Below, piece by piece: positions 7,237-60,990 of a stretch of 62,637 nucleotides of DNA. The notes beneath the pieces were generated by a model, which searched no databases, was not told where the DNA came from, and worked only from the letters and a program-made list of their open reading frames with translations. The stretch comes from Octopus sinensis. Taxonomy: Eukaryota. How positions within the stretch are numbered: position 1 is the stretch's first letter; the number at the start of each line of letters is the position of its first letter. The translations under genes were made by a program, and so were the position numbers. The DNA lies in contig NW_021832978.1 in assembly GCF_006345805.1 (NCBI RefSeq), positions 1 to 62,637 of the forward strand, written 5' to 3'.

Positions 7237-7397
7237 GGCGCAGGAGTGGCTGTGTGGTAAGTAGCTTGTTTACCAACCACATGGTTCCGGGTTTAGTCCC
7301 ACTGCGTGGCAGCTTGGGAAGTGTCCACTACTATAGCCTCGGGCCGACCAAAACCTTATGACTGTATTTGGTAGACGGAAACTGAAAGAATCCTGTC
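7237..7397 (+). mobile_element. SINE 5' half (duplicate of 4371-4531)
   Basis: Part of the tandem duplication. Confidence 0.85.
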
Positions 7398-15657: not shown

Positions 15658-15709
<52 letters not shown>

Positions 15710-16656: not shown

Positions 16657-16689
<33 letters not shown>

Positions 16690-17230: not shown

Positions 17231-17239
17231 CTCTTCCCA

Positions 17240-21082: not shown

Positions 21083-21559
21083 GCACACACACACAAGTCG
21101 GACGGCGGATGGAACAACGGTTTGCCTATTGATGAGAGAATCGGATGTGAGGACATCTGGATGGAACTCCGCTTCAGAGAGCATCGTGCGGTGTGTGGAG
21201 GGAGAGAAAGGGACGGAGCGACGGCGAGTGATGCCTATTATTAAAAAGAGTGAGAATAATATAAAATAGTGTTTATAACACATTATCGATAAAGATCGAA
21301 CATTGATCAATGGAATTAGTACAGATTGCGACTCCACGTCGCTGATTCGTATTTTATTTCGCTTTTTCACATTTCCAATTCTTTTCTTTTCCTTTCACTC
21401 TGCCTGCAATCGCCACACAGGTTGCATGGTCGCTGGAGTGAAGTGGCTTAGAGGTTAGGGGTATTCGGCTTAGATTTGGGGGGATATATTAATATATGCT
21501 GAGGTGGGAGAGAGAGGATTTTCTAAGTTCCCTTAATTTTTATATGAGTGACAACACAT

Positions 21560-39773: not shown

Positions 39774-39790
39774 CTAACTACTACTACTAC
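39750..39790. repeat. (AGT)n poly-serine coding microsatellite with a 1-bp interruption
   Basis: The plus strand reads ctactaacta at 39771-39780. Confidence 0.95.
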
Positions 39791-42613
39791 TGCTACACAC
39801 CAGTAGATTGTCGGATCGACAAGCGATACAATTGTATCTATTTTCCGTGTGGTAAGTTGCCAAGACCAATGGGAATTCCACTTTTAATGTCAGCAGTTGA
39901 TGGTTATTGGTCGTTATAACCAATGTGTTTGATCGCCAGCAACACATATGTCTAGGGACAACATTTAACTTGATAGAGTCAACGAGTTGACCATCAAAAG
40001 TTAATATCTTAATGTTTTCATTTGTGCTGTCATATAAAGCAACCAGGTTATTTTCTGTAATAACCAAACAACCAATCTCCACTGGATGTTTATCTCCAAA
40101 ACTTTGAGGGGCAACAACTTCATGAGCTTTATCATAAACTGTGAGATCTTGTAGATACAATCTAGAAGACAACATTTCACTGAGACTGATGTTTCTAGAA
40201 AATACATCTACTAGATCGATGAACATGTTAATTTGGCTTCTTGTGACATGATCTTTCACCAGCAAGTCATGCTCATTTACAGCAAACATGCGGCTGTTGT
40301 CTATCAAATGAACACACATTTTATCAATACGTCCACCATAGAGATTGGATTGTGTTTTCCCTTGCGACAGTAAAATATTGGGTATCATCTCAATGCTATA
40401 AGGACCACCGTCATAACCATAGAGATTGGAGGGTGTTTTCACTTCGGATGGTAAAACACTTCTTCCCCTCTTCCTGATGATCTTGTAGAAGAATACTGCT
40501 TTCTTACCAACAATCAATAGCTTTAGTGTTTCATTTTCTAACGATAATGATTTCATTACAAAAGGAATATTAATTTTATGAATTATTTGAACTCGATTAC
40601 AATTTTTAATGTTTAAAATATCTAAATGCGATGGTTTATCGCAATAACAAATAATATGACTTTCACCCAGCTTACACACCCGTACATAAGCCTGGTTTAA
40701 TGCTACACTTATAACTGCCTTTGATACGTTTCCGAAGACCCGTAATTGCTTCTCTAGAGGTAATGTGACGCCTATCTGATTATAATTCCATCGACATACA
40801 TCTGTAGCTGTAGACGGCAGAGATAATCTAGACACAATGTTCCCTTCGTTGGAAATGTATAACAAACAATCATTATATATGTCGGACAACACCAACTGTC
40901 CATTTGCCAGATGACATATTTCACCAATGAGAACTTGGTCATTCTCCTTTTCTTCGAGTCGAATATTTAGATTTTTATTATAAGGGTTTTGAAAGGTTAC
41001 ATGACAGTCTGACCAGTCATGGTACTTGTAAAGAAGAATCCGACTGAGCAGATCGTCCCGCACATAAGCTGTTCCTTGGAAAACAGCAGCGTGACAGCGA
41101 AAGTTTGAAGGAAGTTTCAACTGCCATTTCCTTTGTCCAGTTATATTGTAACAAGTCATCAAAGACTCTCTCCTGAAGATAACATAGAAGTATAATTTGT
41201 CTGTGAAAACATGATGAGGATAGCCATTGAACTCAATGTGTTTCTTGGAAAGCTCCTCACCAAAGCTTGAATAAAATAACAAGTTACGTTTCTTTCTGTC
41301 TACAACTACAAAATTAATTGGAGTAGCAGCAATGGCGACATTGTCATGGTCCAATGAAATTCTGTTTACAATGTCGACATGATCCTTTTTAATCAATAAA
41401 ATATGTACCTCCACTTTACCTTCATTGGTGGTCAGAGCCAAACACCTATTTGATACCATATGACACATTTGGATGTAATTGTTTTCGACGTCTATTAAAT
41501 CACCTTCAGTTAGTTGTGGACAGGTAATATACTGAAGTTTCCTGTCCTCACTAAAAAGGACAAGAAATGTGTTCGAATCCACTCTGCAGAAAACAGAAGG
41601 CTGGAGTTTAAAGGTTAAACATTTTCCACCAAACGGTTGCCCTTCGTCAGTAACTAATATAGCTTTTAGATCCCGATATATAATTACTACTGAAGAGGCT
41701 GACATAGGTAGAATCGTTGTAATGTTGGAGGGGTCATCAATATGGATTTGGTTTATCAGGCTCGGGACATGGTCTTGGTGATGGTAAGACAGCCGAGGCC
41801 AAAAATCTTTATTTGTCCTAATAATATGTACAAGACCAAAACGGTCAGTCAAGTAAATATTATTTGTTGCCACACAAATATATCGAGCTTTTATCCCAAT
41901 TTCTCTTTGGGACACAGCACCGTTTGCTGAAATCTTGTAAATTACATTTCCTTGCACAGCGTAAGAATAATTTCGATATACGGTGAGGTCGGTTGGAATA
42001 TCGATGGAATGGGTCCTCAACTGAAACAAGTGTCTGCCATCTATTGTGTAACAGCTAATTCTATTTATATTAGCTAAGGCTATTAAGATATGATACTGTG
42101 GACCAACTGCTATGTTTCCAACAATTTCTTGTACACTAAATTTTTCTTCAAATTTATTTTTATCCCAGTCTATGAGATATATTGTCTTACTAAACATTTC
42201 TGTCCCTACAAATGTAGAATGTTCGAAATAGGAAATTGTAAAGAAACTATAATCCAGAGATTTTATGTGGAAACTTGATGGATTAATGAAAACTATTTTC
42301 TTGCGGAAAGGAATTGTGGCTAGAACAGTGTGTTCACCAATTCTTGTCATGTCTGTGACATTAGAAGAACAATGAAAATCAAAATCACCGCCTGTTGTGG
42401 CACAACTTATTAACTTCAAATCTGGTGAATAGGTTACTATTCCATTGCAGATTTCAACGATTCTTGAAACTGTGACTAAGTTCTTGGAATCGTTATCGGA
42501 GTCTGTGAGCTGCAATATTTTGGACACAGCTGGGCAAAGGGGACGGAATTTGGATGAATGCGACTTCATAATACTTTTACAGTCAAAACGTGGTATCTGC
42601 ATGTAGTGATCAT
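39774..42613 (-). CDS. Terminal exon part 1: tandem NHL-like six-bladed beta-propeller modules
   Basis: 942-aa ORF extended by a canonical acceptor (tattcag|AT GAT CAC TAC ATG) at 42613, phase 1. It contains molluscan TRIM/NHL-type blades, e.g. IGEICHLANGQLVLSDIYNDCLLYISNEGNIVSRLSLPSTATDVCRWNYNQIGVTLP. Confidence 0.92.
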
Positions 42614-45230: not shown

Positions 45231-45760
45231 CCAAAGGACAATATTAACTCTATTCTGTTTTCTAAGTTAGCCATTTTGCCAACAGCGATAACCTTGGTGG
45301 ACATTTTATTAAATTTCAATAATAACAATATTTTAAAAAACAAATTGATGTGGTTACTTGACTGGGAACGAGAGGAGCTGCTGCTTGTTGTATACAAAGG
45401 GAGTGGAAGAGAGCGAAAAAGGGAGAGGACGAGAGAGACTAAAGTGAGATGACAGACGGTACTTATTCTCCTTAAAGGGACAGAACCGCTTAAGGGTTTA
45501 TATTTTATCTTTTGCATATTTCTCCTTATCTTGAGACGCCTTTTATTCTGAGTGGAAGAATATCTGATGCTTCCACTTTTCTATAAAATCCATTTCTTGG
45601 ATATTCCTGTAGTTGTACAAGAATAGAAAAAAAATGTGTAGCTAACCATTCGAAATAAATGTAGCAAAAGAACTTGTTCTCAGTCATTCTGTCAAACAAA
45701 GTTGCTCGGAAAATGGTAAAATTGATAGAAATCAATAAGGTATTGGCAATTTATACTCAC

Positions 45761-45811
45761 CAGCTGGCTCCACCTCTGTTTGGACTTCATTGTCAACAAG
45801 CGTTAAAGTAA
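45761..45811 (-). CDS. Microexon A, 51 nt, phase 1-1: (V)TLTLVDNEVQTEVEPA
   Basis: tttcag acceptor, gtgagtat donor, open frame continuous with the terminal exon. Confidence 0.8.
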
Positions 45812-46613
45812 CTGAAACAAAATTTTCTAAATTTTACACTTTACAGAAAAATGTCTTTATCTTAATTAATAATCTAAATTTTGTTATTCTGTGACATTCC
45901 TGTCATTGATGGTCAACTGGTGACCCGTACGGCTTGGGTCAACATTTTCATACTTCCTATAGGGATACCATGTAATAACTCAATATTCAGGTCCACTACT
46001 AAATAGACTAACCTTCATATATCTCCATATTAAGACATCCCACATAATCTAAGGATCACTCTATTAAGATATCTACATAATCTAATAATTATCTTATATA
46101 ATTATCACTTGATAACACGGATTATCTCTTAGTTTAATTTTCCCTTTCATCTATCGGAGCCCAATCTATGATATGGCATTGTTCTCTCACCTCCAGATTT
46201 CCCTAATGAACTCCCAGGAAGAATGGGACGAAATGGTGAGTAATGATCTTGAAATGTTGAGCCTAACAGTCACTTGGCAGTTTGCTGTGCTTGAGAACAA
46301 CCACCAACCTAAATAAAATAAAGGTCATAAGCGCCTGTTTGTCCCCCAACAATGCCTCCCCAACACATGTCGCATTCTCCTCCATTCTTCCTCATGTACC
46401 TACATGCACATATGATGCCCTACTGTTTCTCATCCCCAACCATATCCACAATTCCTCCTTCCTCTACTACTTTCCTTTCACAAACTTATAAACTAACCCT
46501 CCCTCCCAGATCACTCTCTGTCGTATTTCACCATTTTCTCTATCGACACATGAGGCAGCCATAGAAACAAAGGCAAAATAGACATTTGTGGGCTGCTGTT
46601 ATTTTATACTTAG

Positions 46614-46667
46614 CAACTGGCTCTGCTACCATCGTCTGCACTTATTTCCCTTCAAGCTTTAGATTCT
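46614..46667 (-). pseudogene. Dead microexon, 54 nt: NLKLEGK*VQTMVAEPV
   Basis: Homologous acceptor, in-frame TAA, donor mutated to ctaagt. Confidence 0.7.
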
Positions 46668-46976
46668 CTGAAATAAATATTATTTACACTAAAGTCATTT
46701 TATCATTATCAATAATCTATATTCTGTTATTGTGAGAGATCCCTACCATCAATGGTCTACAAGAGTTCACACAGGTTTCGGTCAATATTTATATACTTTC
46801 AACAGTGGGCCCATTATTTATGCCCTCCACAAAATTGATTGGCATTCCTAAATCTCCGCTCTCAATTAAGACATCTTACATATCTCATTTACTTCTCACG
46901 TATCCACCTTAATAAAGTAGATGAGGTAATGGCAAACTTGATAGAAATCAAAAAGGTAATGTTGATTTATACTCAC

Positions 46977-47027
46977 CAACTGGTTCTACTTCTGTTTGAA
47001 CTTCATTGTCAACAAGTGCTGGCGTCT
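46977..47027 (-). CDS. Microexon B, 51 nt, phase 1-1: (E)TPALVDNEVQTEVEPV
   Basis: Canonical AG/GT; paralogue of microexon A. Confidence 0.8.
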
Positions 47028-47712
47028 CTGAAATAAATATTCTAAATTTTACACTTCATAGAAAAACATCTTTATATTTCCTAATAATCAAAATATTATT
47101 CTTGTGAGGTATTCAGAAAATATTTGAAGATATTTCAATGTCATTAATCCTCCTTAATAAGCAGATATTTTCAGGTGAGCAATGATTGCTACTAAACAAG
47201 TGGAGCAGAAAGTGATATCAAGTATCCTAAAAACCTTGTACAAAACCTCATTAACTATACGTGTCATTTCATCCACATATTATTGCAAAGGAATTATATT
47301 TGGAATAGTACTGACTCTCAAGAATATATAAGCAAGACAGAGATATAAATCAAACTGGAAGCGCCAAATTTATTTTGCATTATGTTTTGATTTTAACTCC
47401 ATCACAGTTTGTGCCTTGATCCGATTGCCTCAAGACGTGTCTCTCAGCAAGCTACCGTACCATTGTCTTCAAGCTTTTGGCATGATTTCTCTTGCTATTT
47501 GTAACTTCACTTGTTTCTGCTGATCATTTACAAACGATACAAAGCACTACTTATTCGATTTAAACCACATTTTTGTCGAAATAATGTGTTAATCCAGTCT
47601 AACCAGAATTATTTGCATATCCTTCTGATCACACCTTAATATTATTATTAATCCATGAATGCCTCAAGTGAAGGTAAAATTGATAGAAATCAATTAGTGA
47701 CTTTATACTCAC

Positions 47713-47784
47713 CAACTTGCTGTGATGCATCTTTTGAAGTAAATGCCTCTGTCTGGACTTGCTTGTTCTGAGACTTGGGAAACC
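47713..47784 (-). CDS. Microexon C, 72 nt, phase 1-1: FPKSQNKQVQTEAFTSKDASQQV
   Basis: tatttatttcag acceptor, gtgagtat donor, open frame. Confidence 0.75.
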
Positions 47785-47894
47785 CTGAAATAAATATTTC
47801 AAGGTTTTTAAATTTTATTATAAAATATTTTAAATCTAGATATTAATAATATATATTTAATTATTGTGGGACTTTCTGATCATCAATGGGCAGC

Positions 47895-48080
47895 CTGTGT
47901 ATGAACAGCTGTGTATGCTACATAGTAGTGAAATGTATGTTGTGAACACAGAGGACGTGTAAAGGCTTGAACAAAATGGAACCAGCATGCTCCACTGGAT
48001 GGTCACTGTCAGTGTGCAGGTATAAAATGCTGACATGTTTTAAGATAAAAGTCGAGAGTTATCACGTGTATGTAGTACGC
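47895..48080 (+). mobile_element. Intronic RTE-clade LINE fragment
   Basis: NTEDV*RLEQNGTSMLHWM resembles TSEDMRRLETNKASMLRWM of the 34560-35270 copy. Confidence 0.55.
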
Positions 48081-51000
48081 AAGACAGACGACTGTGCCAG
48101 TATGACCATGTGATATGTATGAATAAGATCAGCTGTATAAAGAGCACCGATCTGTAAATGTGGAGAGAACCTCAAGAAAAATGGAAGGAAGTGTTGAGAA
48201 ATGAGCTTCAGATCTTGAACCTGAGAGTCAATCGGTAGAAAAGCGGGTATCTTTAAGAGACATATGTTCCTCAACCAATGGGAGTGGGTAGTATCTCAGA
48301 ATATGAAGTGTCTTGGGTAGAGGCCGCCCATCCAATGCATTTTAGAAAGAAAATCAGACGATAAATGATGAGGATGTATTCGATTGTATTGTAACATGCA
48401 GCTAGTATTTATCTTGAAAGAGAAAGAGACAATGGTTTTCTCAGCAGAAAACCAAAGTCATTACTTTGATAAAGACAATGCTTAGTGGATGGAACGATAA
48501 ATTCAATGTATCTAAGAAAAAGCAACAGCAAAAATAAAAGTTTTAAAACATTGTTAAAAGATATGAAGAGATAATATTTTTTAACAGCAACATCCGACAC
48601 AATTCGTGATATAACAACTCAAATCTTCCTAATTTAACCAAAATATTGCACACAGTTCATACAACACCATTTCCAAAACACTTCCGTCCCATTAATTGTC
48701 TATAAACACAGAAGTTGCTACACCAGTCGTCTCGCAAGCTGAAAACACTGATATACACCAGTGGAGCTTAGTACTATAGGGAGAAAGCCGTGATTTTCTG
48801 GCAATGTTTAACTTGACCATTACAAAAGTCGTTAACACTAGAAGGAGTTCAGATGTACAATTACAAACTGCACGGTGGAGAGATATCATATTCTACCCTG
48901 ACTGCTACCACAATCCGCCGTACACAAAACGCTGCATTTTAGCAGTTCCTTGTGTGATGATTAACAAAATGAAAGAATGGAATATCTGACGGGTTAGATC
49001 TGTATTTTTCACTGAGACTATGACCAGCTACCTCTGGTTATAGATCTATTAAAGGGCCGAGTAGAAATTAAACTACACATGGTAAGATTTCATGAGAGAG
49101 AGCTGTCTCCCACACATAATAGACACAATATATTGAGATAAGCCCGCCCCAGCACCAACTTTATCAGAGAATAAAATAAATAACAATCGAATAAACAAAA
49201 CAGAAACGACATTTTTACTATTTTAGATAAATCAATTAATTACTGCACACCAATTTCTAATTGCTGGACAAACTTCAAACAATCTGACACCGCGACAGCA
49301 GGTATCCTGAAACATTGTACACTTGCACAAAACCTTATTAACTACATTTAACTGGTCATCTACATACTATTGCATAAACATATCCGAAATGATACACAAT
49401 AACTGACAATTAAGCATATATAAACATGACGCAAATATAGATCAAACTGGAAGCATTGAATCTTACGTTTGCCAAGAAGTTTCGAATACTCTCATTCTTT
49501 TAATCCATTCCCATGTTTTCGTTTTCATCTTAATGCCCTTACAATTATTGGACAAAGAGGCAGCGCAACACTGTCCGAAACTTTTATAAGTTTTTCCCTA
49601 AACGTATGCATAGTTTCTCCTGCTACTTTGAACTTCACTTTGTTCTGCTGATCTTCCACAAATAACAGATTGTATTATTCATTTCCTTTAAGTCAAATTC
49701 TTGACAAAGTAATCAGTCCACCCAGGCTATCCAGAAATATTTGCATAACATTTTGGTCTCTACATAGTATTTTTATGTCATCCATGAATGTCTTGTCTGG
49801 TGCTTTCACTTGGGTCATTTCTTCTGAGCAGACTACTGATCTAAGTAACATCTCCAAACAAACTGAAGGATTAATATTGTGCACCCTACTCCAATTCCGA
49901 TGACATTCCCTGTAAAATGGTTTGTAATGAGCTGCCTTTTGAAATTGTTATAACAGCTCATCATCAGACCTTAAATTTTCCCCAGTATGTAAAAGAATTT
50001 CATTGATTTCATCAATAAAATTATATGGTACACAACCATATTCCTTAGAGCGATCAAGCCGTACAACATTCCAATTACTTCAATTCTTCTTTTTGTGTTG
50101 CTCCCAGTTTGACATTTCATGTCCTACAAACCAAGAAAGTCAGGGATTTCCAGTCCTCTGCACACTTTCCATCACATATCAATTATTTTGTAGGTGTATA
50201 GGTGATCTCGTAGCATGTACATCCACGTAAAGCTTGTCATTAAGGATTGAAACTAATTTCAATTGGCCAATTAATTGTGATTCAGATTCCTTTCATAAGT
50301 GAACTCTTTCTGCCTTATATCAGTCATAAATCCCTTCAATTTTATACCACAACCCCTTACTATTATATAATGCTTATATAATGCAGTTTTTGCTCTTGCC
50401 TCCCTTCTTGCTGCAATCTCTCAGATAAAAGTTTAATTCCTGACTTTCTTTGAGGTTTTATTAGAAAGACATCAACGTTTCTTTTGCTTGTACCACAATA
50501 AAATGCACCTAGGACACTTTATCAAATGGTTTGTTTTAGGAAATTATACCCTCATATAAAACCTAGAATGGTTAACTGAGATTTGTCTGCTATTTGATCA
50601 AGAGGTGGGAGCATGGAAATCAGACGATGAAGGATGAAGAGATTGTCAATTATTGTATAGTATCTTGCAACCAGTATCTGTTTTGAAGTAAGAAATATAG
50701 ACAACAACTATCACAGAAGTAAGTTGGATAAGGGCAATGTGTAGCGTATGTAATGAAATATCTGTGAAATAAATCAGACTGCTTATACTTGAAATACCTT
50801 TCAAAGTACTTTTTTAGAAATATCAGCCAAAATAACAACATTAATCTATCAGCAAACATAGTAGAAAATGTAAAACAAAGAGAAATGTCATTAACACGAA
50901 TGTTTATCGCTAAACAACTACAAATATTAGTTTTCTCTTCCAAAGTGAAGTATAAAATCTATTGTCTTCCAAGTTATCCATTTTACAAACCATGCTCACC

Positions 51001-51256
51001 ACATCGGATATTTTGTGAAATTACAATAATATCGATATGTTTTATTGGCTAAACTTGCAAAATGACCATTCCGAAATATAATAATATCTGTTTCAACACA
51101 CGACTTCACATAAAAAAATCTTGCACAACAAATATTTAATAGAATTATTATGCATCAAACTTTTCAAATGCAAAATGTGGATTGGAAGATGTTGTCAGTC
51201 ATTCAGTAAAGTTAAAATTTACAGTAATCGTTAAGGTAATGATATTTTATACTCAT

Positions 51257-51319
51257 GATCAAATGATTCTGTTTCAAGCATAGGAAAGATTGGAGACAGT
51301 ATTGTTTGCGACTGTGTGT
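51257..51319 (-). pseudogene. Probable dead microexon D, 63 nt: TQSQTILSPIFPMLETESFD
   Basis: Homologous flanks, but acceptor reads ccg and donor reads atgagt. Confidence 0.55.
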
Positions 51320-51450
51320 CGGAAAAATATATTTTCAAGTTTTACATTTTACACTATAATGTGATTATATCTATTAATCAAAAATATTCCATTACCGTAA
51401 GATATCTTTATTTTCAATGGTCAACGGCTGACCACTATGCTTTTGGTCAG

Positions 51451-52469
51451 CACGCTTTCAATATAACAAAACTCTATATTAAGAGCCACCAAAATATTAA
51501 CTAATTTCCTATCTATACTCTCTGTATTCAGACATCAAATATAATTTAACAATATTGTAATTATTTAATTTCATTGTCTCTTTATAACAATATTTTGCTT
51601 TTAGTTTTCTCTTTCCTTCCGTATTTCTCTGATTTTCAGGGAGTTTAAGGCACAGGTATAAATAGAGGATAACTCAACTACTGAAAACCATTGCTATAAA
51701 GAGATAATTACGTGAAGTATTTGCAATATTGTTCAATTATGTTGGATGTCACAGTACATTACATAGATATGTGAAAGTTGGTCTCAAAACGAAGCTGGAT
51801 TGGACCAATCGCATAAATCTCTTCAACGACACCGATTTACCTGCAATTTACAGCAGGTGTGAAAGCTGGTACACAACGAAGATGGAGGATGTGAGTCTGA
51901 TAATGGCCAAAATCACAATCGAAAAATCGAGGTTATGGAATGTTGCTAAATTTGCACATCAGGAGTGAGGCGATCATAGAGAAATCAGGTGTGAGAGACA
52001 TCATCACTAAAAACTTATGACAAAATTTCAGATGGGACAGGTAGCCAGCTCACTGAAATTATTTAGGGATGCACAGTTGTTGAGAGTTATATACGCGAGC
52101 AGAGGAGGTCACTGAGAGCGAATCCAAAAGTGAGTGTTTGACGAAATACGACATGCTACGTAGGTGAGAAGGTCAAGATGAAGACAGAAGTGGAGGATGC
52201 ACTGTGTTCTCTGGTGTCGTCAATACACTCAGTCAGTCGACCATGGTCAAGGTGGTATTTCTGTCACATCTATGACATAGCGTTTTCACCTCTACCGTAG
52301 TAAACCTCACGAACCAAACTTTTCGTTTTCTGCTCAACTCCAATGACAAGCAAGTTGATAACCATACATCTATCTACAAAAACTGGTCACACTACTTACC
52401 GTTAGACAGAAAGTACCTGCTCTCTCCGTGAAACATTGGTTTTGGTAATCTTTGATTTTAACTGCCCAC
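51451..52469. repeat. ~1.02-kb near-identical intronic duplicate, copy 1 (contains an RTE-like fragment)
   Basis: Matches 54963-55981 at a constant 3512-bp offset. INLFNDTDLPAIYSRCESW resembles the RTE LFNSTVLPA..YGCETW motif. Confidence 0.92.
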
Positions 52470-54755
52470 ATCAACCTGCGTATTTGTGACGCATCTATGA
52501 CATGGCGTTTTCACATCTACAGTAGAACTCACTAATCAAACATTCTTATAATTTTCTGCTCACTTCCAATGTCAACAAGGTTAATCATCAAATATCGATC
52601 TTCAAATACATTTCACACCACTTCATTTTAGACAACTAGCACCTACTCTCTGCGTGAAACATTGCTGCTGCTAATCTTTAAGTTTAACCGCTCTCACCAA
52701 CGTTCGCCAGAATGTCTTCTGATACAGAAGATGTGTGAAACATCCTTACAGAAACAGTTTTCTTTCCAGATGAGTAATAATTTATTCTACTAAGTTGTTG
52801 GCGAAATTGGTATCAGGTACCCCAAAAACTACACCGCCGTTTATCTACACATCATTGCATAAAATGCATCCGAAATGGTACATAATAGAACTGATTCTCA
52901 AAAATACATACGCAAGCCATGTCAGAAACATCATATACTATATTTACTTTGAGGTTTTCACAAATCTATTGCTTATAAACCATTATCGATTTTTACCATG
53001 ATCTCAATATCTCTATTCTTACTAGACAATAGGGAAGCCTACCAGCATACGAAATACTTACAAATTTGTCATTAAATTATGTCATGGTTTCTCTTGATAC
53101 GTTGTATATCACTTGTTTCTGCTGACCTTTGACAATTAAAAAACCGTATTATTTATTTGCATTAAGTCTTAATCTCGACCAAGGATTAAATCCATTCCGG
53201 TTGTCCAAAACTATTAGCATATTGTTTTGATCTCTTTCCCTTATTTGTATGTCATCGATGATGTTTCTTCAGCCATATCTGCTGAGCAGTCTGCTGATCT
53301 GAGTAACATCTCATTAACAAAGACTGACATTTTGCATCCTACTCTAGTTTCACGCCAATCCTACTCTCTGTATAATATGTGTGTAACGAATAGCATTTGG
53401 AAATTGTTAAACCAACTCTTCGTCATATTTTAAAATCCTCCTGTATGTAAACGAAGGCCATTGCTTTTCTCGATGGTTTATGTTGTTCACATCCCTAAGC
53501 ATTAGACTGATCCAACCATACAACATTCAAATCACTTCTATTTTTCTATGTGTGTTGGTCCCACTTTTACAAGGCATGTCCCAAACACTCAGGATGTCAA
53601 CGAATCCTTTTGCAGTCACACTTTCAGTCTCATTAAAGTTATTTTGTCGATGTGTAGTTGATCTCTGACCATGGAAATCTTAGCAATCATAATTGCAATC
53701 GGTGCCAACTTGCGAATTAGTTTCGCTTTAGCTTAAATTGTACGCAAAATCTTTCTCTCTTCCTCCAGCCATCAATCACACCAACTTTATACCCGAAAGC
53801 TCCACCATTATGTGATGCCTACAACAAAACCTTGTACAAGACTTGAAACTTTCTAATGTACAGCCTCACCTTACCTTATACCCAAAGATAACTACTTCTT
53901 TCCTGCTGCAATCCTCAAGCTCAAATTCTTCGTTCCTGATTTTGTTGGACATTTTCTTAGAGAGACGATAATATTTCACATGCTTTGCAACAATAAAATG
54001 CACCTAGAACCCTTTAGAAAGTGGTTGGTGTCAGGAATGGCATAGCACTACATGAAAGCAGTGATGTTTAAGTGAGATATGTTCCTCTACGAATGAAGAA
54101 GGGAAGTAGTTCTGAAGAAGAACTGACTTGGACAGCGACAACTCATCTAGTCCATAGGAGCCTGGAAATCTAACGATAAGTGTCGGGGTTGTTACCTGTG
54201 ATTCACTTGCATCGTGCAACCTGTATCTTTCATGAAGTAAGAAAGGCAGATACCGATTATCACAGTAGCAAAGAAATGTTTTCTATTCGGAAAAGACAAT
54301 GTGTAGTGGATTGTAATAATGAAATTACTACCAGGTAACATAACAGAGAGTTTACACTTGGAACGCATTTCATTGCAATTCTTCTAGATTATGAGAAGCA
54401 TCCGTTTAAATAGCAACAATAACAATAATAACCTTCAAGTAAACATGATAAAAAGTGTGACAAAAACGGCTGTCATTAACTCTAAATTTATATTCCTAAA
54501 CAAATTAGCTTAGTTCTCTCTTTCTCAAAACTATACAAAATATATTCCCGTTTCAATTTTCCATTTTACAAACCACTCTAACCTCGTTGGATATTTTGTG
54601 AACTTTCAGTAATATCGATATATTGAATAGAATTATTATACAACCTTTCGAATCTAATTAGGGATAGAATCTGTACTCAGTCGTTCTAACATACAAAAGC
54701 TCGAGATAAATTGAAATGTATAGAAATCAGTAACTTAATATTATTTCATACTTAC

Positions 54756-54842
54756 ATTCTTCCTCTGATTCATCTACTCCAGAAGATGATTGTAAACCGG
54801 AATCGGTACTGGCTCCGGGTACTATACTTGCTGTTGAATGTT
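54756..54842 (-). CDS. Microexon E, 87 nt, phase 1-1: (E)HSTASIVPGASTDSGLQSSSGVDESEEE
   Basis: tattcatttcag acceptor, gtaagtat donor, open frame. Confidence 0.75.
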
Positions 54843-54962
54843 CTGAAATGAATATTTTCAAGATTTGCGTTGTATAGCATGATGTGCTTATCTTTGTTAA
54901 TAATCTATATTTCACTATTGTGACTTATTTCTATTGTCAATGGTCAACGGCTGACCATTATG

Positions 54963-55981
54963 CACGCTTTCAATATAACAAAACTCTATATAAAGGGCCA
55001 CCAAAATATTAACTAATTTCCTCTCTTTACTCTCTGTATTCAGACATCAAATATAATTTAACAATATTGTAATTATTTAATTTCATTGTCTCTTTATAAC
55101 AATATTTTGCTTTTAGTTTTCTCTTTCCTTCCGTATTTCTCTGATTTTCAGGGAGTTTAAGGCACAGGTATAAAGAGAGGAAAACTTAACTACTGAAAAA
55201 CAGTGCTATAAAGGGATAATTACGTGAAGTAATTGCAATATTGTTCAATTATGTTGGATGTCACAGTACATTGCATAGATATGTGAAAGTTGGTCTCAAA
55301 ACGAAGCTGGATTGGACCAATCGCATAAATCTCTTCAACGACACCGATTTACCTGCAATTTACAGCAGGTGTGAAAGCTGTTACACAACGAAGATGGAGG
55401 ATGTGAGTCTGATAATGGCCCAAAGCACAATCGAAAAATCGAGGTTTGGGAGTGTTGCTAAATTTGCACATCAAGAGTGAGGCGATCATAGAGAAATCAG
55501 GTGTGAGAGACATCATCACTAAAAACTTATGGCAAAATTTCAGATGGGACAGGTAGCTAGCTCACTGAAATTATTTAGAGATGCACAGTTGTTGAGAGTT
55601 ATATACGCGAGCAGAGGAGGTCACTGAGAGCGAATCCAAAAGTGAGTGTTTGACGAAATACGACATGCTACGTAGGTGAGAAGGTCAAGATGAAGACAGA
55701 AGTGGAGGGTGCACTGTGATCTCTGGTGTCGTCAATACACTCAGTCAGTCGATCATGGTCAAAGTGGTATTTCTGTCACATCTATGACATAGCGTTTTCA
55801 CCTCTACCGTAGTAAACGTCACAAACCAAACTTTTCGTTTTCTGCTCAACTCCAATGACAAGCAAGTTGATAACCATACATCTATCTACAAAAACTGGTC
55901 ACACTACTTACCGTTAGACAGAAAGTACCTGCTCTCTCCGTGAAACATTGGATTTGGTAATCTTTAATTGTAACTGCCCAC
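54963..55981. repeat. ~1.02-kb near-identical intronic duplicate, copy 2
   Basis: See 51451-52469. Confidence 0.92.
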
Positions 55982-56222
55982 TTCTACGTACATCAGAATG
56001 TCATCTAATGTAGAAAATATTTGAAGACCCCTGAATGAAATAGATTTCATCCCAAGTGAGGAATAATTAATTCTACACAGGTGTAGGAGAAAGAAATATC
56101 AGATGTCCCCCAAAACTGTTACCACCTAATTTACTTCATATAAGTTCATGGTAAATTTACTATCAGTGAAATATGACAGAATCTTTATGGAAATCGATAA
56201 GGTAATATAAATTTAAACTCAC

Positions 56223-56273
56223 CATGAAGTTTTCTACTGAGTAGTCTCCTTCTGGCTAAATTTCTTCTATAAT
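56223..56273 (-). CDS. Microexon F, 51 nt, phase 1-1: (D)YRRNLARRRLLSRKLH
   Basis: tattcatttcag acceptor, gtgagttt donor, open frame; Arg-rich. Confidence 0.7.
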
Positions 56274-56784
56274 CTGAAATGAATATTTTCACGTATTACA
56301 TTTTATTGTATGAATTGGTTATATCTCTTAATCTATATTTTGATATTCTTCGACATTTATATCTTAAATGGTCAACGGGTGACCACTATATCTTTGGTGA
56401 GCGACTCATACTGTTTACCACAATATTTAGAGCCTTCAAAATATGCGCAAATTTCCTACATATCCCCTCTGTATTTAGATATCCAGCATAATTTATCAAG
56501 ATTGAAATTATTTAATTCAATTACCTCTTTATAACGGTATTCTTCATTTAGTTATGCCTTTCCTTTCGTATCTCCCTGCATTTGAGCGAGTTTAATGTAC
56601 AGATATAAGAGAGCAAAACTAAACTAATGAGAAACAGTGTTATAAAGAGATAATTACGTGAAGTAATTGCAATATTGTATAAATTATGTCGGATGTCGCA
56701 TTACAGTGCGGTGATATATATCCGTAATCAAGCGATCAGAGAGAATTCTGGTGAGAGCGACATCATCACCAAATGCAGAAGGAA

Positions 56785-57143
56785 GAAGTGTTGTATTACT
56801 CTTGAATAGTGTCCTGATGTCATATGGGCAGCATATCTTTTGTATCTTTTCGGAGAGGCCTTTCACATAGGGTAGACAGACTGTGGACAGTTCATTGGTT
56901 TCATCCTCTTTTTTCGTCATAATTGGAGGGGATTGTATGTTTTTGGGTAGTTGTTGCTTAATAGATTGTTAATTAGCTTGATCATTTCTTCGTGGTGGGT
57001 TTCACGATCGACACTTATATTCTTAGTCGATGTTTTAGGCACTGAGCAATCCCTCTCTTTACACTGTATGGATGGTAGGAAATGAAGTTGAAGTATCGTC
57101 CAGTAAAGGTCAGTTTGCGGTATACGGATGTCCTGAATCCATA
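56785..57143 (-). mobile_element. Intronic Penelope-like fragment
   Basis: Close match to 19621-19981 (LSTVCLPYVKG.SEKIQKI; HEEMIKL.NNLLSNNYPK). Confidence 0.88.
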
Positions 57144-58209
57144 ATTTATTGTATTGTATCTTGCAGCAAATATTTATCCTGAAGAGAGTGAGACAATGGT
57201 TGTCCCAGCAGGAAACCAAAGTCTTCTTCTTGGACAAAGACAACGTTTAGTGCAGGTAATGATAGATTTACTTTCAGTGAAAAAAGTATGTTCACAGTTG
57301 GAACAAATTTCATTGTGACTCTGCGAGATTATGAGAGACATCTGCCTAAACAACAACAACAATAACAATAACTGCCTCTCCATAAACAGTCATAATGAAA
57401 AACAAACAAAATCCTAATTCTCCTGCTTACACTTAACCCATGGCCTGCCATGAGCCCCATTTGAGGATCTGATAAAAATAGTTTCACTGCCGGTTGTTCG
57501 TTGTATTTTAAGTGAATTGCTTGCTTACATTGCATTTGTAGAGGTGTGTTTAACAATATTTAGTAATTAAATTTTGTCATTATTAACTCTGGCTAATTCT
57601 AGAGGACATTTATATCACAAATCGCAATTTTTGAACTACAAAAATATTGACTGTTTTGAAAAGTTCTTTTGTCTTTTCTTGCATTTCCCTTCTATATCAT
57701 TCATTGATATTTCATACACATTCGCATTTGATACTCTAGTTTCAGAAAAACTAAAATCTTTATTATTGCAATTGAATAGAAAAGGATAAATATGTTTTTT
57801 CTCAGCGATCCCCATTTGGGACTTATCGAAACAATTATCATAATTTCCAAAATAATTCACATATGAAGAAAATTTAAATGCTATATATGATTTTTAACTC
57901 CTGAGACATCAGGCAAAGCCAAAAAGTATAAATAAAAGTTTGAAACTTAAGGGTTAAACAGCATTATTAGTTTCATGATCAAATGACAAAATCAACTCTA
58001 TTGTGTCCTCTATTTTCAACCGTACTAACTTGGAGCGATATTTTATAAACTTTCAGCAATATCGATATCTTTAACAGAATTATTATACAGCTAATCTTTC
58101 AACTTGAAAGTAGGAGTGGAATCCATTTTCAGTTATTCTTTCAAACACAATACACCCAGGTAAATTAAATCTTATAGAAATCAATTGGGAACTCTTATTT
58201 TATATTCAC

Positions 58210-58263
58210 CACTTTGCTCGGATGTAGGCTCTAATAATTGTAAATCTGTTTGCACTCCCTTGT
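58210..58263 (-). CDS. Candidate microexon G, 54 nt via a cryptic acceptor: (D)KGVQTDLQLLEPTSEQS
   Basis: Donor gtgaat is intact. The homologous acceptor reads ctg, but a downstream caaag gives a frame-preserving exon. Confidence 0.45.
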
Positions 58264-59663
58264 CTTTGGAGATACAGAAATAAACATTTACAAGTTTTAC
58301 ATTTAATAATAAAATTTCTTTATCTTTATTTTTATTAAACTCTATCTTGTTATTGTGAGACATTCAATTCCTGTTGTTACTGGTCAACTGTTGACCATTA
58401 TGGTTTTGGTCAATATTTCTGTACTTTCTAAAGTGGTCCCATGTAATAGCCCAATATGTCCACAATAAAACAGACTAACATTCCTAAATCCACCCTCTCC
58501 CTCTCTTTCTCTCTCTCTCTCTCTCTCACACTCTCTCTCTCTAAAAACACATTAAATATTCTAACAATGTTGCAATTATCCCGTTTAATTAACACTTGAT
58601 AACAGTTTTCTCTTAGCTTTGTCTTTCTCTTCTTATAACTGTGCCAAACCTATGGCATGGCACTGTCCTCTCATCTCTAGAATTCACTAATCAACATTCC
58701 TCTCTAGTTAAGTAAAACTGAGGCCATAAAGATGTCCTTTATGTGTATACACTCCACTCCGCAACACTGTCTGTCCCCTAAAAACATCTCCACAAGCCAA
58801 ATTGCATACACACTTCCCCAACATGATCCCTAACAAGATATAAAATGTAAGGTAAGGGTACATGATGATGCTATGACAAAATTTGAACGCAACAATCAAG
58901 ACCAAAGGGTGAAACACTCAGAGAACTGTGCCTCTTTTAGCATTAATATCATCTAAAATCTAACAAGTGTGAGAAAAAGAATGACTATATGGATGGTAAA
59001 TGCTGTTCAAACAACGTAATAAGTGTATATTATATATAGTTACAAACAAGGATTTGTGAGATCAAGTCACACAGGGAACTCATATTTAATTCCTATCTTT
59101 ATATTTTATGTCAACGCCAATATTTTGTTTAAATGCAAACAGATGTTCACGGTTCAATACTAAATCTAACATTTAATAAAATTAAGTTCATGATGAATAT
59201 TCTTATACAGAGTTAATATTTAATTAGAATTTTCTAATTTGCAACTACAAAATGTATTCTAACCAGAGACATTCAGGGTACACATCCCCAGAAAATACAA
59301 AATATTACGACAGACATCTGGCTACATAACAACATCAAGAATAACCTATCAGAAAACTTACGAAAGATCTTAGTAGAAAAACAAACAACAATTTTATTAA
59401 TTCACGAGTTTACACCTAAAATAATAAATTATAGTTCCATAGAAGACAATATTAACTCTTTTGTGGCTTTTAATTTATCCATTTTACCAAACATGTTAAC
59501 CATGACTTTATGAAATTTCATATTTTTAATACAATTACTTTAGAGCTAACCTTTAAATGGAAATTAGAAATGGGATTTGTTCTCCACCATTCTAATACGC
59601 AAAATAACTGAGGTGGATGTACAATCTATAGAAATTAATTAAGATCTCTAATTTTAAACTCAT

Positions 59664-59714
59664 CAACTGTCTCTGCCACAGTCTGCACTACCTTCTCTTC
59701 AAACTTTGGACTCT
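59664..59714 (-). pseudogene. Probable dead microexon H, 51 nt: (E)SPKFEEKVVQTVAETV
   Basis: Canonical acceptor and open frame, but the donor reads atgagt. Confidence 0.55.
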
Positions 59715-60850: not shown

Positions 60851-60990
60851 CATCTCCAGTTCTGCTCGTTACAGGTTTCCCGCACTTCAGACATCGTTGA
60901 AGAGAGATTCTCGAACATGTTTCACATGTGACAAAATGCCCGCATGGAAGAAATTTTATTGTGGCCGTTTTATTTCTGCACCACAAACAC
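60851..60990 (-). CDS. RING-HC (C3HC4) exon, Mind bomb/IAP-like E3 ligase domain; phase 2-1
   Basis: ttttgttccacag acceptor, gtaaga donor. CLWCRNKTATIKFLPCGHFVTCETCSRISLQRCLKCGKPVTSRTGD resembles MIB RING1 (PCGH..TC..CS....C..C...V.SRT). Confidence 0.88.

What the first reader, a model, noticed from the sequence alone, without database searches (positions are those of the whole stretch)
45761..59714. Battery of duplicated symmetric (phase 1-1) microexons encoding LC8/DYNLL-type xVQT motifs, with live and dead copies
Seen: nine homologous exon cassettes of 51-87 nt (all multiples of 3) share an aatatt(t/c)atttcag-like acceptor, a gt(g/a)agt-like donor and conserved flanking intron blocks. Six carry VQT: DNEVQTE x2, NKQVQTE, DKGVQTD, EKVVQTV and GK*VQTM. 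Three or four have broken splice sites or a stop. Established: the LC8 dimerisation hub binds [DS]Kx[TVI]Q[TV][DE] motifs, often multivalently in disordered linkers. Inference: exon birth-and-death plus skipping could tune LC8 valency, and hence RING dimerisation, without changing frame.
Basis: partly seen in the sequence, partly recalled or inferred. Interest (0 to 1): 0.8.

Follow-up and report, generated by a model that had tools for sequence, protein, structure and literature searches.

The report
Spliceable LC8-motif microexon array in octopus
Behind the RING-finger exon of an octopus ubiquitin-ligase gene lies a row of nine duplicated mini-exons, several still usable and several dead, most encoding a near-perfect docking motif for the dimerising hub protein LC8; related octopus genes use such mini-exons in different numbers in their annotated isoforms, so splicing could set how many LC8 dimers the protein binds.

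Summary
The window is a whole 62.6-kb Octopus sinensis scaffold. On its minus strand a RING exon (60851-60990) is followed by exactly nine homologous cassette units (45761-59714), then a large exon encoding tandem beta-propellers (from 42613). All the joins are phase 1.

Cassette status:
- C1, C5 and C8 are dead. They carry the same lesions in every related locus and appear in no annotated protein.
- C3, C4, C6, C7 and C9 have intact splice sites.
- C2 has lost its ancestral acceptor but has an in-frame cryptic one.

C2, C6, C7 and C9 encode DKGVQTD, NKQVQTE and DNEVQTE. On a matrix I built from 79 validated LC8 binders they score at or near the binders' median. They are 4 of only 5 such hits in 83,448 six-frame octamers.

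The cassettes belong to an Octopus-specific "MIB2-like" family: ankyrin repeats, RING, cassette linker, Death domain. In that family:
- Homologous cassettes are annotated exons, some carrying canonical KETQT.
- Isoforms in three species differ by whole cassettes.
- The array is predicted to be disordered.

LC8 binding is untested. Inclusion of this locus's own cassettes is not shown: the two models that join a RING to this large exon skip them. This is a new variant of known kinds, namely multivalent LC8 clients and spliced linear motifs.

The parts
60851..60990 (-). RING-finger exon (C3HC4, all eight zinc ligands). Acceptor phase 2, donor phase 1.
   Evidence: Pfam zf-C3HC4_3 E=1.2e-9. Boundaries read. 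92% identical to the RING of P0011 and 82% to that of P0020.
59664..59714 (-). Cassette C1, 51 nt, SPKFEEKVVQTVAETV. Pseudoexon: donor is ATGAGT.
   Evidence: The same dead donor is present in L001, L003 and L005, and the cassette is absent from every annotated protein. LC8 matrix score 3.7.
58210..58274 (-). Cassette C2. The ancestral acceptor is mutated (CAG>CTG) and 7 nt are deleted. A cryptic AG gives a 54-nt in-frame exon (58210-58263) encoding (D)KGVQTDLQLLEPTSEQS.
   Evidence: The intact 72-nt paralogs in L003 and L005 are exons of P0013 and P0018 (ASPKFADKGVQTDLQLLEPTSEQS). Matrix score 16.9-17.4.
56223..56273 (-). Cassette C3, 51 nt, YRRNLARRRLLSRKLH. Splice sites intact, no LC8 motif.
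   Evidence: A C3-type exon is used in P0012 (YGRDFAKRTQLSSKQY). The exon is 67% identical to L001 while its flanks are 92-93% identical.
54756..54842 (-). Cassette C4, 87 nt, HSTASIVPGASTDSGLQSSSGVDESEEE (acidic, Ser-rich). Splice sites intact. It ends in T, so joining it to C7 or C8 makes a TAG stop.
   Evidence: The peptide is 100% identical over 30 aa to an exon of P0012.
51257..51319 (-). Cassette C5, 63 nt. Pseudoexon: acceptor CCG, donor AT. Keeps an SQT anchor.
   Evidence: The same lesions are present in L001 and L004, which also carry a TAG stop in this exon.
50564..50611 (-). Non-cassette segment matching the exon 'LPPLDRSADESQLTIL' that model P0011 places between the RING exon and the large exon.
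   Evidence: tblastn, 81% over 16 aa. Weak; splice sites in the window were not verified.
47713..47784 (-). Cassette C6, 72 nt, FPKSQNKQVQTEAFTSKDASQQV. Splice sites intact. LC8-type motif QNKQVQTE.
   Evidence: Matrix score 15.3. The O. vulgaris copy is intact, with E>V at position +2.
46977..47027 (-). Cassette C7, 51 nt, TPALVDNEVQTEVEPV. Splice sites intact. LC8-type motif VDNEVQTE.
   Evidence: Score 13.2. O. vulgaris has five intact tandem copies. The C7-type copy in L002 is an internal exon of P0002.
46614..46667 (-). Cassette C8, 54 nt, NLKLEGK*VQTMVAEPV. Pseudoexon: in-frame stop and donor CT.
   Evidence: Identical in L001; dead in L002 as well (donor AT).
45761..45811 (-). Cassette C9, 51 nt, TLTLVDNEVQTEVEPA. 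Splice sites intact. LC8-type motif VDNEVQTE. Last cassette before the large exon.
   Evidence: Score 13.2. Intact in L001, with A>V.
39774..42613 (-). Large exon with a phase-1 acceptor (cag|AT GAT CAC = DDHYMQIPRF...). About 42 residues predicted disordered, then tandem beta-propellers. The open frame ends at a 1-nt shift inside an (AGT)n microsatellite.
   Evidence: The acceptor is used by models P0001, P0002, P0009 and P0011. AlphaFold2 all-beta model and Foldseek hits to tandem propellers. Frameshift seen.

Best explanation
The region is the modular linker of a member of an Octopus-specific family of small E3 ubiquitin ligases that NCBI names 'MIB2-like'. The family plan is ankyrin repeats, one C-terminal-type RING, a variable linker, and usually a Death domain.

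The linker is built from tandemly duplicated phase-1/1 microexons. Each encodes one 16-29-residue disordered unit. Most units carry one LC8/DYNLL recognition motif of the form [D/N/E][K/N/R]x[V/T]QT[D/E/V/L].

Because every unit is symmetric, any subset can be spliced in without changing frame. Isoforms would therefore carry different numbers of LC8 sites: 0 to 4 in annotated paralogs, and up to 3 or 4 at this locus.

Inferred mechanism: LC8 dimers bind two chains in parallel and zip the linkers into a ladder. This would hold two RING domains, and the downstream domains, in register. Valency would set how stable that dimer is.

Tandem duplication adds units. Splice-site, stop and anchor mutations retire them.

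This locus is an unusual, partly decayed member:
- C1, C5 and C8 are old pseudoexons.
- C2 is damaged but possibly rescued by a cryptic acceptor.
- C3 and C4 are usable spacers without a motif.
- C6, C7 and C9 are usable motif exons.
- The array feeds a tandem beta-propeller exon from an unrelated octopus family, not a Death domain.

Shown: the anatomy, the homology, the splice-site states, the use of homologous cassettes as exons and in alternative annotated isoforms elsewhere, the motif fit, and the predicted disorder. Inferred: LC8 binding, dimerisation, and use of this locus's own cassettes.
For: Anatomy and phases.

Family membership:
- The linker-only search returns Ank-RING-linker proteins named MIB2-like.
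- A profile search finds 70 proteins, all from Octopus, several with precomputed Pfam Death PF00531.
- An exhaustive HMMER search adds O. bimaculoides members.

Cassettes are exons elsewhere:
- P0002 = exon 1 + C7-type cassette + large exon, using exactly the predicted AG and GT.
- P0013 and P0018 contain the C2-type cassette.
- P0012 contains C3-, C4- and C6-type cassettes, with the C4 peptide 100% identical to the window's.

Isoforms differ by cassettes:
- P0015 has three; P0014, P0016 and P0019 have one each.
- P0031 has two KETQT units; P0040 has none.
- P0067 versus P0077.
- O. bimaculoides P0214, P0088 and P0215 carry 4, 3 and 2 VQT motifs.
- P0216, P0091 and P0217.

Dead copies are consistently dead across loci and are never annotated as exons.

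Motif fit:
- The consensus [D/S]-4 K-3 x-2 [T/V/I]-1 Q0 [T/V]+1 [D/E]+2 is given in PMC3078936. Flank preferences are given in PMC6607443.
- I built a scoring matrix from that paper's 79 validated binders. Their leave-one-out median is 14.3. C2 scores 16.9-17.4, C6 15.3, C7 and C9 13.2.
- Only 5 of 83,448 six-frame octamers in the window reach 13, and 4 of them are these cassettes in the predicted frame.
- Across the first batch of family proteins (P0011-P0083) there are 0 hits among 8,191 pre-RING and RING octamers, against 37 among 4,839 post-RING octamers.
- Canonical KETQT occurs in paralog cassettes.

Disorder: in the AlphaFold2 model of P0021 the array (residues 160-270) has pLDDT 23-33 and no secondary structure, between confident Ank and helical C-terminal domains.

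Birth: O. vulgaris has five tandem intact C7 copies.
Against: - No binding data and no transcript reads were available.
- At this locus the annotated protein P0003 starts inside the large exon. This is explained by the scaffold ending about 0.4 kb short of the preceding ankyrin exon, but it means there is no direct model here.
- P0009 and P0011 join a RING exon to this large exon and skip every cassette.
- The one C7-type cassette present in a model (P0002) has VET instead of VQT.
- O. vulgaris C6 has E>V at +2, and O. vulgaris C2 reads VQI with a dead donor.
- The four substitutions I read in the C1, C6, C7 and C9 cassettes between the window and L001 are all non-synonymous. For C1, C2 and C5-C9 exon identity equals intron identity, so no constraint is detectable at this depth.
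- Roughly a third of annotated family cassettes have degenerate anchors (VQA, VKT, VKK). Some paralogs (P0086, P0090) keep five- or six-unit arrays with no good anchor at all.
- My matrix separates validated binders from anchor-containing non-binders only moderately: non-binder median 8.6, maximum 16.2.
- The beta-propeller reading frame is interrupted in the window, L001 and L002.
Confidence: 0.6

Rival explanations
1. At this particular locus the array is a relic. A rearrangement placed the RING and cassettes upstream of a beta-propeller gene and removed the Death-domain exons. Since then all nine cassettes are skipped or untranscribed and drift neutrally. The LC8-like motifs are inherited, not maintained. 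This is compatible with the family-level function being real.
For: - P0009 and P0011 splice a RING exon to the large exon without any cassette.
- C2 and C3 are degraded relative to paralogs.
- The substitutions I read in the motif cassettes versus O. vulgaris are all non-synonymous, and exon identity equals flank identity.
- There is no Death-domain exon in the window or in L001.
- The propeller reading frame is interrupted in all three copies.
Against: - C3, C4, C6, C7 and C9 keep AG/GT sites and open frames in both species.
- C7 has been amplified to five intact copies in O. vulgaris.
- A C7-type cassette is an exon in P0002.
- The window's frameshift sits inside an (AGT)n microsatellite and could be an assembly error.
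Confidence: 0.3
2. The cassettes are real alternative exons, but the xQT core serves something other than LC8. They might act as a flexible spacer that sets the RING-to-Death-domain distance, or as a beta-strand motif for another partner. The resemblance to the LC8 motif would be coincidental.
For: - Arrays persist in paralogs whose units all read VQA or VKT (P0086, P0090).
- About a third of annotated units have degenerate anchors.
- The published work notes that many TQT-containing peptides do not bind LC8 (PMC6607443).
- The whole unit is moderately conserved, not only the anchor (consensus xPKxE[DE]KxVQTxAEPV).
Against: - The match covers five of the eight motif positions: D at -4, K at -3, V/T at -1, Q at 0, T at +1, D/E at +2.
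- Canonical KETQT and KDKETQTQ occur in paralogs.
- ADKGVQTD nearly equals the validated binder ZFPM1 SDKGVQTP.
- The TRAF2 and TRAF6 consensus motifs, recalled from memory, do not fit.
Confidence: 0.2
3. The units are copies of a transposable element or an assembly artefact that merely resemble exons.
For: - The flanks carry a palindrome (TGGTCAnCnGTTGACCA).
- The intervening DNA is rich in repeats.
Against: - There is no copy outside the 14-kb array in the window.
- All copies lie in the gene's orientation.
- Copies occur only in loci of this gene family, always after a RING exon.
- The same arrangement is seen in an independent O. vulgaris assembly.
- Copies are used as exons in annotated proteins.
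Confidence: 0.02

Closest known systems
Multivalent LC8 (DYNLL) clients such as ASCIZ/ATMIN (7-11 TQT motifs), Nup159, RSP3, Chica/FAM83D and GKAP
   Same: Several LC8-type motifs are strung along a disordered segment at short, regular spacing. Here the period would be 17 residues between adjacent C7 and C9, or 26 residues in the P0021-type paralogs. LC8 dimers are expected to ladder two chains together. Motif strength varies along the array (PMC5963919 and PMC10046861, abstracts seen; binder list).
   Different: Here each motif is its own symmetric microexon. Copy number therefore changes by tandem exon duplication and by splicing. The anchor is mostly VQT rather than TQT. The host protein is a RING E3. 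No binding has been measured.
LC8 sites that depend on alternative splicing: Bim (BimEL and BimL bind DYNLL1) and myosin Va exon B
   Same: Presence or absence of an LC8 site is decided by which exons are included. BimEL/BimL binding to DYNLL1 is stated in PMC4695108. The lack of the site in BimS, and the role of myosin Va exon B, are from my own knowledge.
   Different: Those are single on/off sites. Here the annotated isoforms span 0 to 4 sites drawn from a battery of near-identical cassettes.
Symmetric (1-1) exons encoding disordered segments and linear motifs, as a general route of modular evolution and splice-variant rewiring
   Same: Phase-1/1 short exons, predicted disorder, a linear motif per exon, duplication and skipping. 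Based on the abstracts of PMC3632108 and PMC3424572.
   Different: Those are genome-wide statistical trends. This is one concrete battery with visible live, dead and newly amplified copies across paralogs and species.
RING E3s with a dimerising element between the RING and a beta-propeller (COP1, TRAF7, TRIM-NHL proteins)
   Same: If the RING-to-large-exon transcript is real, the order is RING, then a dimerising segment, then beta-propeller(s). The comparison proteins are recalled from memory.
   Different: In those proteins the dimeriser is a built-in coiled coil. Here it would be an external hub protein recruited by spliceable motifs. No homology is implied.
Vertebrate MIB1 and MIB2
   Same: Ankyrin repeats followed by a zf-C3HC4_3 RING. 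This is why NCBI names the octopus proteins MIB2-like.
   Different: The octopus proteins are about 300-550 aa. The Pfam scan found no domains in them other than ankyrin repeats, the single RING and a weak Death match, so no MIB/HERC2 or ZZ domains. They carry one RING and add the cassette linker and a Death domain. The domain plan of vertebrate MIB1/MIB2 is from my own knowledge.

Membership tests
LC8/DYNLL-binding linear motif | Anchor triplet [T/V/I]-Q-[T/V] at positions -1, 0, +1 | tested here: met
   VQT in C1, C2, C6, C7, C8 and C9; SQT in C5. VQT anchors occur in 3 of the 79 validated binders: ZFPM1, SON and MAST1.
LC8/DYNLL-binding linear motif | Favourable flanks: H-bonding residue (often D) at -4, K/R at -3, D/E/P at +2, no pre-anchor proline or bulky residue at -2 | tested here: met
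   C2 is D-K-G-VQT-D. C6 is N-K-Q-VQT-E. C7 and C9 are D-N-E-VQT-E. Scores of 13.2-17.4 compare with a validated-binder median of 14.3. C1 (V at -2) scores only 3.7. The matrix is my own, not LC8Pred.
LC8/DYNLL-binding linear motif | Motif lies in an intrinsically disordered region | tested here: met
   In the AlphaFold2 model of paralog P0021 the cassette array has pLDDT 23-33 and no secondary structure. The first 42 residues of the window's large exon are also low-confidence. This was tested on a paralog's array, not on the window's own spliced linker.
LC8/DYNLL-binding linear motif | Direct binding in the LC8 dimer groove | not testable with these tools
   Needs ITC, NMR, pull-down or a multimer structure prediction.
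Alternatively spliced cassette exons | Functional AG acceptor with polypyrimidine tract, GT donor, length a multiple of 3, open frame | tested here: met
   Met for C3, C4, C6, C7 and C9. Not met for C1, C5 and C8. C2 meets it only through a cryptic AG.
Alternatively spliced cassette exons | Both inclusion and skipping observed in transcripts | tested here: inconclusive
   Only annotation-level evidence exists, and only in paralogs. Isoform sets differ by whole cassettes in three Octopus species, and a C7-type exon is in P0002. For this locus only skipping models exist (P0009, P0011). No reads were available.
Octopus 'MIB2-like' Ank-RING-linker-Death family | zf-C3HC4_3 RING directly upstream of the cassette linker, with a phase-1 donor | tested here: met
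Octopus 'MIB2-like' Ank-RING-linker-Death family | Ankyrin repeats N-terminal to the RING | tested here: inconclusive
   The scaffold ends 1.6 kb upstream of the RING exon. In the colinear O. vulgaris locus the ankyrin exon lies about 0.4 kb beyond the point matching the scaffold end.
Octopus 'MIB2-like' Ank-RING-linker-Death family | C-terminal Death domain after the linker | tested here: not met
   tblastn with the Death-domain parts of P0015, P0018 and P0020 finds nothing in the window or in L001. The array is followed by a beta-propeller exon instead.
Dscam-type mutually exclusive exon arrays | Docking and selector RNA pairings that enforce choice of one exon | tested here: not met
   Annotated isoforms include several cassettes at once (P0015, P0021, P0214). 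The only conserved intronic structure found is a local hairpin. It is present beside dead C5 and absent beside live C7.

The most novel reading that the evidence does not exclude
Octopuses may have evolved a genome-encoded 'valency dial'. A large, fast-evolving family of Ank-RING-Death ligases, which by its Death domain looks like an innate-immune or cell-death signalling family, would set each protein's LC8-driven dimerisation and activity through the number of one-motif microexons spliced in. That number would itself turn over quickly by tandem exon birth and death, and by swapping of the downstream effector domain (Death domain versus beta-propellers).
Probability: 0.3. Interest if true: 0.8.

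Novelty: new variant of a known kind. Interest (0 to 1): 0.62.

Why it matters
Multivalent LC8 clients are known, and so is splicing that adds or removes a linear motif. What I did not find described is the arrangement seen here: one motif per symmetric microexon, amplified in tandem, with annotated isoforms carrying 0 to 4 copies and a visible record of new, live and dead units across paralogs and three species. Four literature searches, one of them aimed at this gene family, turned up no description of it.

If LC8 binding is confirmed, this gives three things:
- A natural series for testing how motif number and spacing control LC8 ladder assembly and RING E3 activity.
- An example of how disordered linkers evolve by exon duplication.
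- A first functional handle on an uncharacterised, octopus-specific ligase family of at least 70 annotated proteins.

Tried and rejected
1. Transposon or dispersed repeat: rejected. There are nine copies in one strand and one 14-kb block, and none elsewhere. Copies occur only in loci of this family.

2. Death-domain exon hidden in the window: not found.

3. Transcript-derived proteins in the large protein collection. Both linker searches returned only proteins deposited in public annotation sets (NCBI, UniRef, EukProt), so there is no independent transcript evidence.

4. Fetching the loci of P0015, P0017 and P0011: not on record. The strict O. vulgaris ortholog carrying the window's RING subtype could therefore not be compared.

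5. Exon-versus-intron constraint test against the O. vulgaris locus: uninformative. Identity is 94-100% in both exon and flanks for C1, C2 and C5-C9. For the RING exon, C3 and C4 the test is confounded by exon-subtype differences.

6. Codon-position argument for the VQT codons (synonymous variation GTG/GTC/GTT, CAA/CAG, ACT/ACA/ACG): set aside as circular, because the cassettes were chosen for having VQT.

7. Regulatory RNA structure. A hairpin about 110 nt upstream of most cassettes is real in sequence but does not track live versus dead status.

8. TRAF-binding or caspase-site readings of the motif: the consensus motifs, recalled from memory, do not fit.

9. tRNA scan of the window: nothing found.

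10. An early error: my BLAST and nhmmer tables mixed loci L001 and L002, because both sit in one file. They were redone per locus.

Full report
**What the window is.** The best protein hit, P0003 (LOC115229669, Octopus sinensis), is 100% identical and sits on a contig of exactly 62,637 bp. The window is therefore a complete small scaffold of the O. sinensis assembly. The gene of interest is on the minus strand.

**Checking the observation.** Reading the minus strand and aligning the units shows nine homologous units. They share an acceptor block (aatatttatttcag), a donor block (gtgagtataaaataaca...ttgatttctat) and about 135 nt of upstream intron.

A profile of the unit finds exactly these nine in the whole window. 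All are on one strand, within 45705-59847, with E-values of 1e-37 to 1e-50 (nhmmer; sequence-only covariance model).

- C1: 51 nt, EEKVVQTV, donor AT.
- C2: DKGVQTD.
- C3: 51 nt, no motif.
- C4: 87 nt, Ser/Glu-rich.
- C5: 63 nt, acceptor CCG and donor AT.
- C6: 72 nt, NKQVQTE.
- C7: 51 nt, DNEVQTE.
- C8: 54 nt, stop codon and donor CT.
- C9: 51 nt, DNEVQTE.

C2 needs a caveat. At the aligned acceptor position it has CTG, and it carries a 7-nt deletion relative to intact paralogs. From that position it is 65 nt and out of frame.

**Gene context.**
- Upstream lies a RING exon (60851-60990; Pfam zf-C3HC4_3, E=1.2e-9) with a phase-1 donor.
- Downstream lies a large exon starting at 42613 with a phase-1 acceptor.
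- Every join is therefore phase 1, and every junction codon except those after C4 and C5 gives D, E, G or V.
- C4 ends in T, so C4>C7 or C4>C8 would create a TAG stop.
- The scaffold ends 1.6 kb upstream of the RING exon. In the colinear O. vulgaris locus the preceding ankyrin exon lies about 0.4 kb beyond the point matching the scaffold end. This explains why the NCBI model for this scaffold starts at an internal Met of the large exon.

**What the cassettes are.** A search with the linker alone and a profile search recover a family of at least 70 annotated proteins. All are from Octopus and most are named 'E3 ubiquitin-protein ligase MIB2-like' or 'MIB1-like'.

The family architecture is ankyrin repeats, RING, a linker made of cassette-sized repeats, and a C-terminal Death domain. 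The Death domain is supported by precomputed PF00531 on several members, a weak direct hit on P0018, and a confident helical C-terminal domain in the AlphaFold2 model.

I fetched five related loci and scanned them with the cassette model. This finds 14 units in the colinear O. vulgaris locus L001, 2 in L002, 5 in L003, 11 in L004 and 3 in L005.

Aligning all 44 units gives a consistent picture:
- The C1 type has the dead donor ATGAGT in all four loci that have it.
- The C5 type has CCG/AT everywhere, plus a TAG stop in the other loci.
- The C8 type keeps its stop and a dead donor in all three loci.
- None of these three types appears in any annotated protein.
- The C2 type is intact (72 nt) in L003 and L005 and is an exon of P0013 and P0018 (ASPKFADKGVQTDLQLLEPTSEQS).
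- The C3, C4 and C6 types are exons of P0012. The window's C4 peptide is 100% identical to one of them.
- A C7-type cassette in L002 is the middle exon of P0002, spliced at exactly the predicted AG and GT.
- One unit in L005 is the first Death-domain exon with the same intron flanks. The cassettes and that exon probably share an origin.

**Alternative use.** Annotated isoform sets differ by whole cassettes:

| Gene / species | Isoforms | Cassette content |
|---|---|---|
| O. sinensis | P0015 vs P0014, P0016, P0019 | three cassettes vs one each |
| O. sinensis | P0021, P0023, P0024, P0028 | different subsets |
| O. sinensis | P0031 vs P0040 | two KETQT units vs none |
| O. sinensis | P0067 vs P0077 | one vs none |
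| O. sinensis | P0216, P0091, P0217 | VQA+VQT, VQT only, VQA only |
| O. bimaculoides | P0214, P0088, P0215 | 4, 3 and 2 VQT motifs |
| O. bimaculoides | P0096 vs P0218 | differ by one non-motif unit; both keep their single VQT |

This is annotation-level evidence. I had no reads.

**Fit to LC8.** The published loose consensus is [D/S]-4 K-3 x-2 [T/V/I]-1 Q0 [T/V]+1 [D/E]+2 (PMC3078936 abstract). Jespersen et al. describe an 8-residue motif in disordered regions. Its features are a buried -1/+1 pair, D favoured at -4, a large positive residue at -3, and P/D/E at +2. They also stress that many TQT peptides do not bind (PMC6607443).

Their Table S4 lists 79 validated binders, three of them with VQT anchors (ZFPM1 SDKGVQTP, SON RCVSVQTD, MAST1 RHQSVQTE), and 32 non-binders. 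I built a log-odds matrix from the binders. It is my own matrix, not LC8Pred.
- Leave-one-out binder median is 14.3. Non-binder median is 8.6, with a maximum of 16.2.
- C2 scores 16.9-17.4, C6 15.3, C7 and C9 13.2, C1 3.7.
- Across all 83,448 stop-free octamers of the six-frame translation of the window, five reach 13. Four of those are these cassettes in the predicted frame.
- In the first batch of family proteins (P0011-P0083), 0 of 8,191 octamers up to the end of the RING reach 11, against 37 of 4,839 after it, with one to four hits per protein.
- This undercounts, because EVKETQTL, the textbook KETQT motif, scores only 8.5 on my matrix.

The AlphaFold2 model of P0021 places the four-cassette array (residues 160-270) at pLDDT 23-33 with no secondary structure. 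This meets the disorder criterion by proxy.

**Evidence that tempers the claim.**
- Between the window and L001, exon identity equals flank identity for C1, C2 and C5-C9.
- The four substitutions I read in the C1, C6, C7 and C9 cassettes are all non-synonymous: C1 V>G, C6 E>V at +2, one C7 copy E>G, C9 A>V.
- L002's expressed cassette reads VET.
- O. vulgaris C2 reads VQI and has a dead donor.
- A rough census of anchor triplets in annotated family cassettes gives VQT 52, TQT 5, VQA 9, VKT 9, VKK 5 and others (isoforms are double-counted).
- Two paralogs keep five- or six-unit arrays with no good anchor.
- The two models that link a RING exon to this large exon (P0009 directly, P0011 through an unrelated small exon) skip all cassettes.

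The family-level reading is therefore much better supported than current use of this locus's cassettes.

**Birth and death.** O. vulgaris carries five intact C7 copies in 4-6.5-kb tandem units that are 95-98% alike, where the window has one. This could also reflect collapse of the repeat in the older O. sinensis assembly. The dead types are old and shared.

**The downstream domain.** The large exon has no Pfam match. With nine family sequences as the alignment, AlphaFold2 gives an all-beta model with pLDDT above 80 for residues 45-265 and 290-500. The first 42 residues are low-confidence.

Foldseek's best PDB matches are all tandem beta-propeller proteins, such as IFT-A WD40 subunits, LRP YWTD propellers, Utp21 and DDB1, with E-values down to 6e-19. 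Whole-chain TM-scores are low, because the arrangement of the domains is not trusted.

Relatives (P0004-P0008, 50-61% identical, 1,160-1,850 aa) lack the RING and the cassettes. The window gene therefore looks like a fusion of an Ank-RING-cassette 5' part with a propeller gene. Its reading frame is broken by one base inside an (AGT)n tract. L001 and L002 carry different breaks. I cannot tell real decay from assembly error.

**Mechanism.**
- Shown: symmetric cassette anatomy, exon use and isoform variation in paralogs, motif fit, predicted disorder.
- Inferred from established LC8 biology: LC8 is a dimer that binds two strands and promotes parallel dimerisation of clients. LC8 would ladder two linkers together, with stability rising with the number of included motifs.
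- Further inferred, and weakest: this aligns two RINGs and raises ligase activity, or pre-organises the Death domains or propellers.

**Comparison with known systems.**
- The array works like the multivalent LC8 clients (ASCIZ, Nup159, RSP3).
- Its splicing dependence resembles Bim and myosin Va exon B.
- It is an instance of the general rule that symmetric exons encode disordered motif-bearing segments (PMC3632108, PMC3424572).
- It is not a Dscam-type mutually exclusive array.
- This locus fails the Death-domain criterion of its own family.

**Verdict.**
- Novelty: a new variant of known kinds.
- Interest: about 0.6.

Noticed in passing
window 60851-60990, 56223-56273, 54756-54842 vs L001 14726-14865, ~21420-21470, ~23080-23170: Between the window and the colinear O. 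vulgaris locus, the RING exon (74% identity), C3 (67%) and C4 (76%) are far more diverged than their own flanking introns (83-98%). Two RING subtypes and two C4 subtypes circulate among paralogs, and both C4 subtypes sit side by side in L004. This looks like exon-subtype swapping or differential loss inside homogenised introns, not simple orthology. Diversifying selection is not excluded.
   Followed up: partly
about 110 nt upstream of each cassette, e.g. window 45905-45925, 54935-54955, 58385-58405: A palindrome, AUGGUCAnCnGUUGACCAU, folds as a 7-9-bp hairpin upstream of most cassettes (z-scores down to -3). It is intact beside dead C5 and missing beside live C7, so it shows no link to exon usability.
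   Followed up: partly
L005 63683-63911: The first Death-domain exon of paralog P0018 (GFQKLDERYLLKLACQLGGNWWKV) has the same intron flanks as the cassettes and is hit by the cassette model. The cassettes and this exon seem to share an origin.
   Followed up: no
L001 27700-54450 (O. vulgaris) vs window 46804-47608: O. vulgaris carries five intact C7 cassettes in tandem 4-6.5-kb units that are 95-98% alike, where the O. sinensis scaffold has one. This is either recent exon amplification or a collapsed repeat in the older assembly.
   Followed up: partly
window 37790-42613 (minus strand): The large downstream coding region encodes tandem beta-propellers of an octopus-only family with no Pfam match. 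Relatives are 1,160-1,850 aa, and two of them end in long (ESEDQISE)n repeats. Its frame is broken by a single extra base inside an (AGT)n microsatellite at about 39775-39790. L001 and L002 have different frame breaks. This is either a pseudogene or assembly error.
   Followed up: partly
window 54756 (last base of C4) with 47027 / 46667: C4 ends in T while all other usable cassettes end in G. Splicing C4 directly to C7 or C8 (which start AG) makes an in-frame TAG. C4>C6 gives TGG, C4>C9 gives TTT and C4>large exon gives TAT. Including C4 would therefore constrain which exon can follow it.
   Followed up: yes
paralog proteins P0013, P0041, P0057, P0068 (C-termini): Several annotated proteins end in 'GEYKIT...' or 'GEYEIT...'. 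This is the translation of the conserved cassette donor GTGAGTATAAAATAAC read through into the intron. It indicates either truncated models at scaffold ends or intron-retention isoforms.
   Followed up: no
window 50564-50611 (minus strand): This short segment matches the extra exon (LPPLDRSADESQLTIL) that model P0011 inserts between the RING exon and the large exon. It lies in a sequence repeated a few times in the intron, so it may be an exonised repeat. In the window no AG directly precedes the matching segment.
   Followed up: no
window 3941-4495 and 6807-7361; 14000-17600 and 21800-24000: There is a ~2.87-kb tandem duplication with near-identical 184-codon open frames. There are also long strand-asymmetric low-complexity blocks, CT-rich then AG-rich with GC skew of -0.58 and +0.72, in inverted orientation. 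Neither is related to the finding.
   Followed up: no
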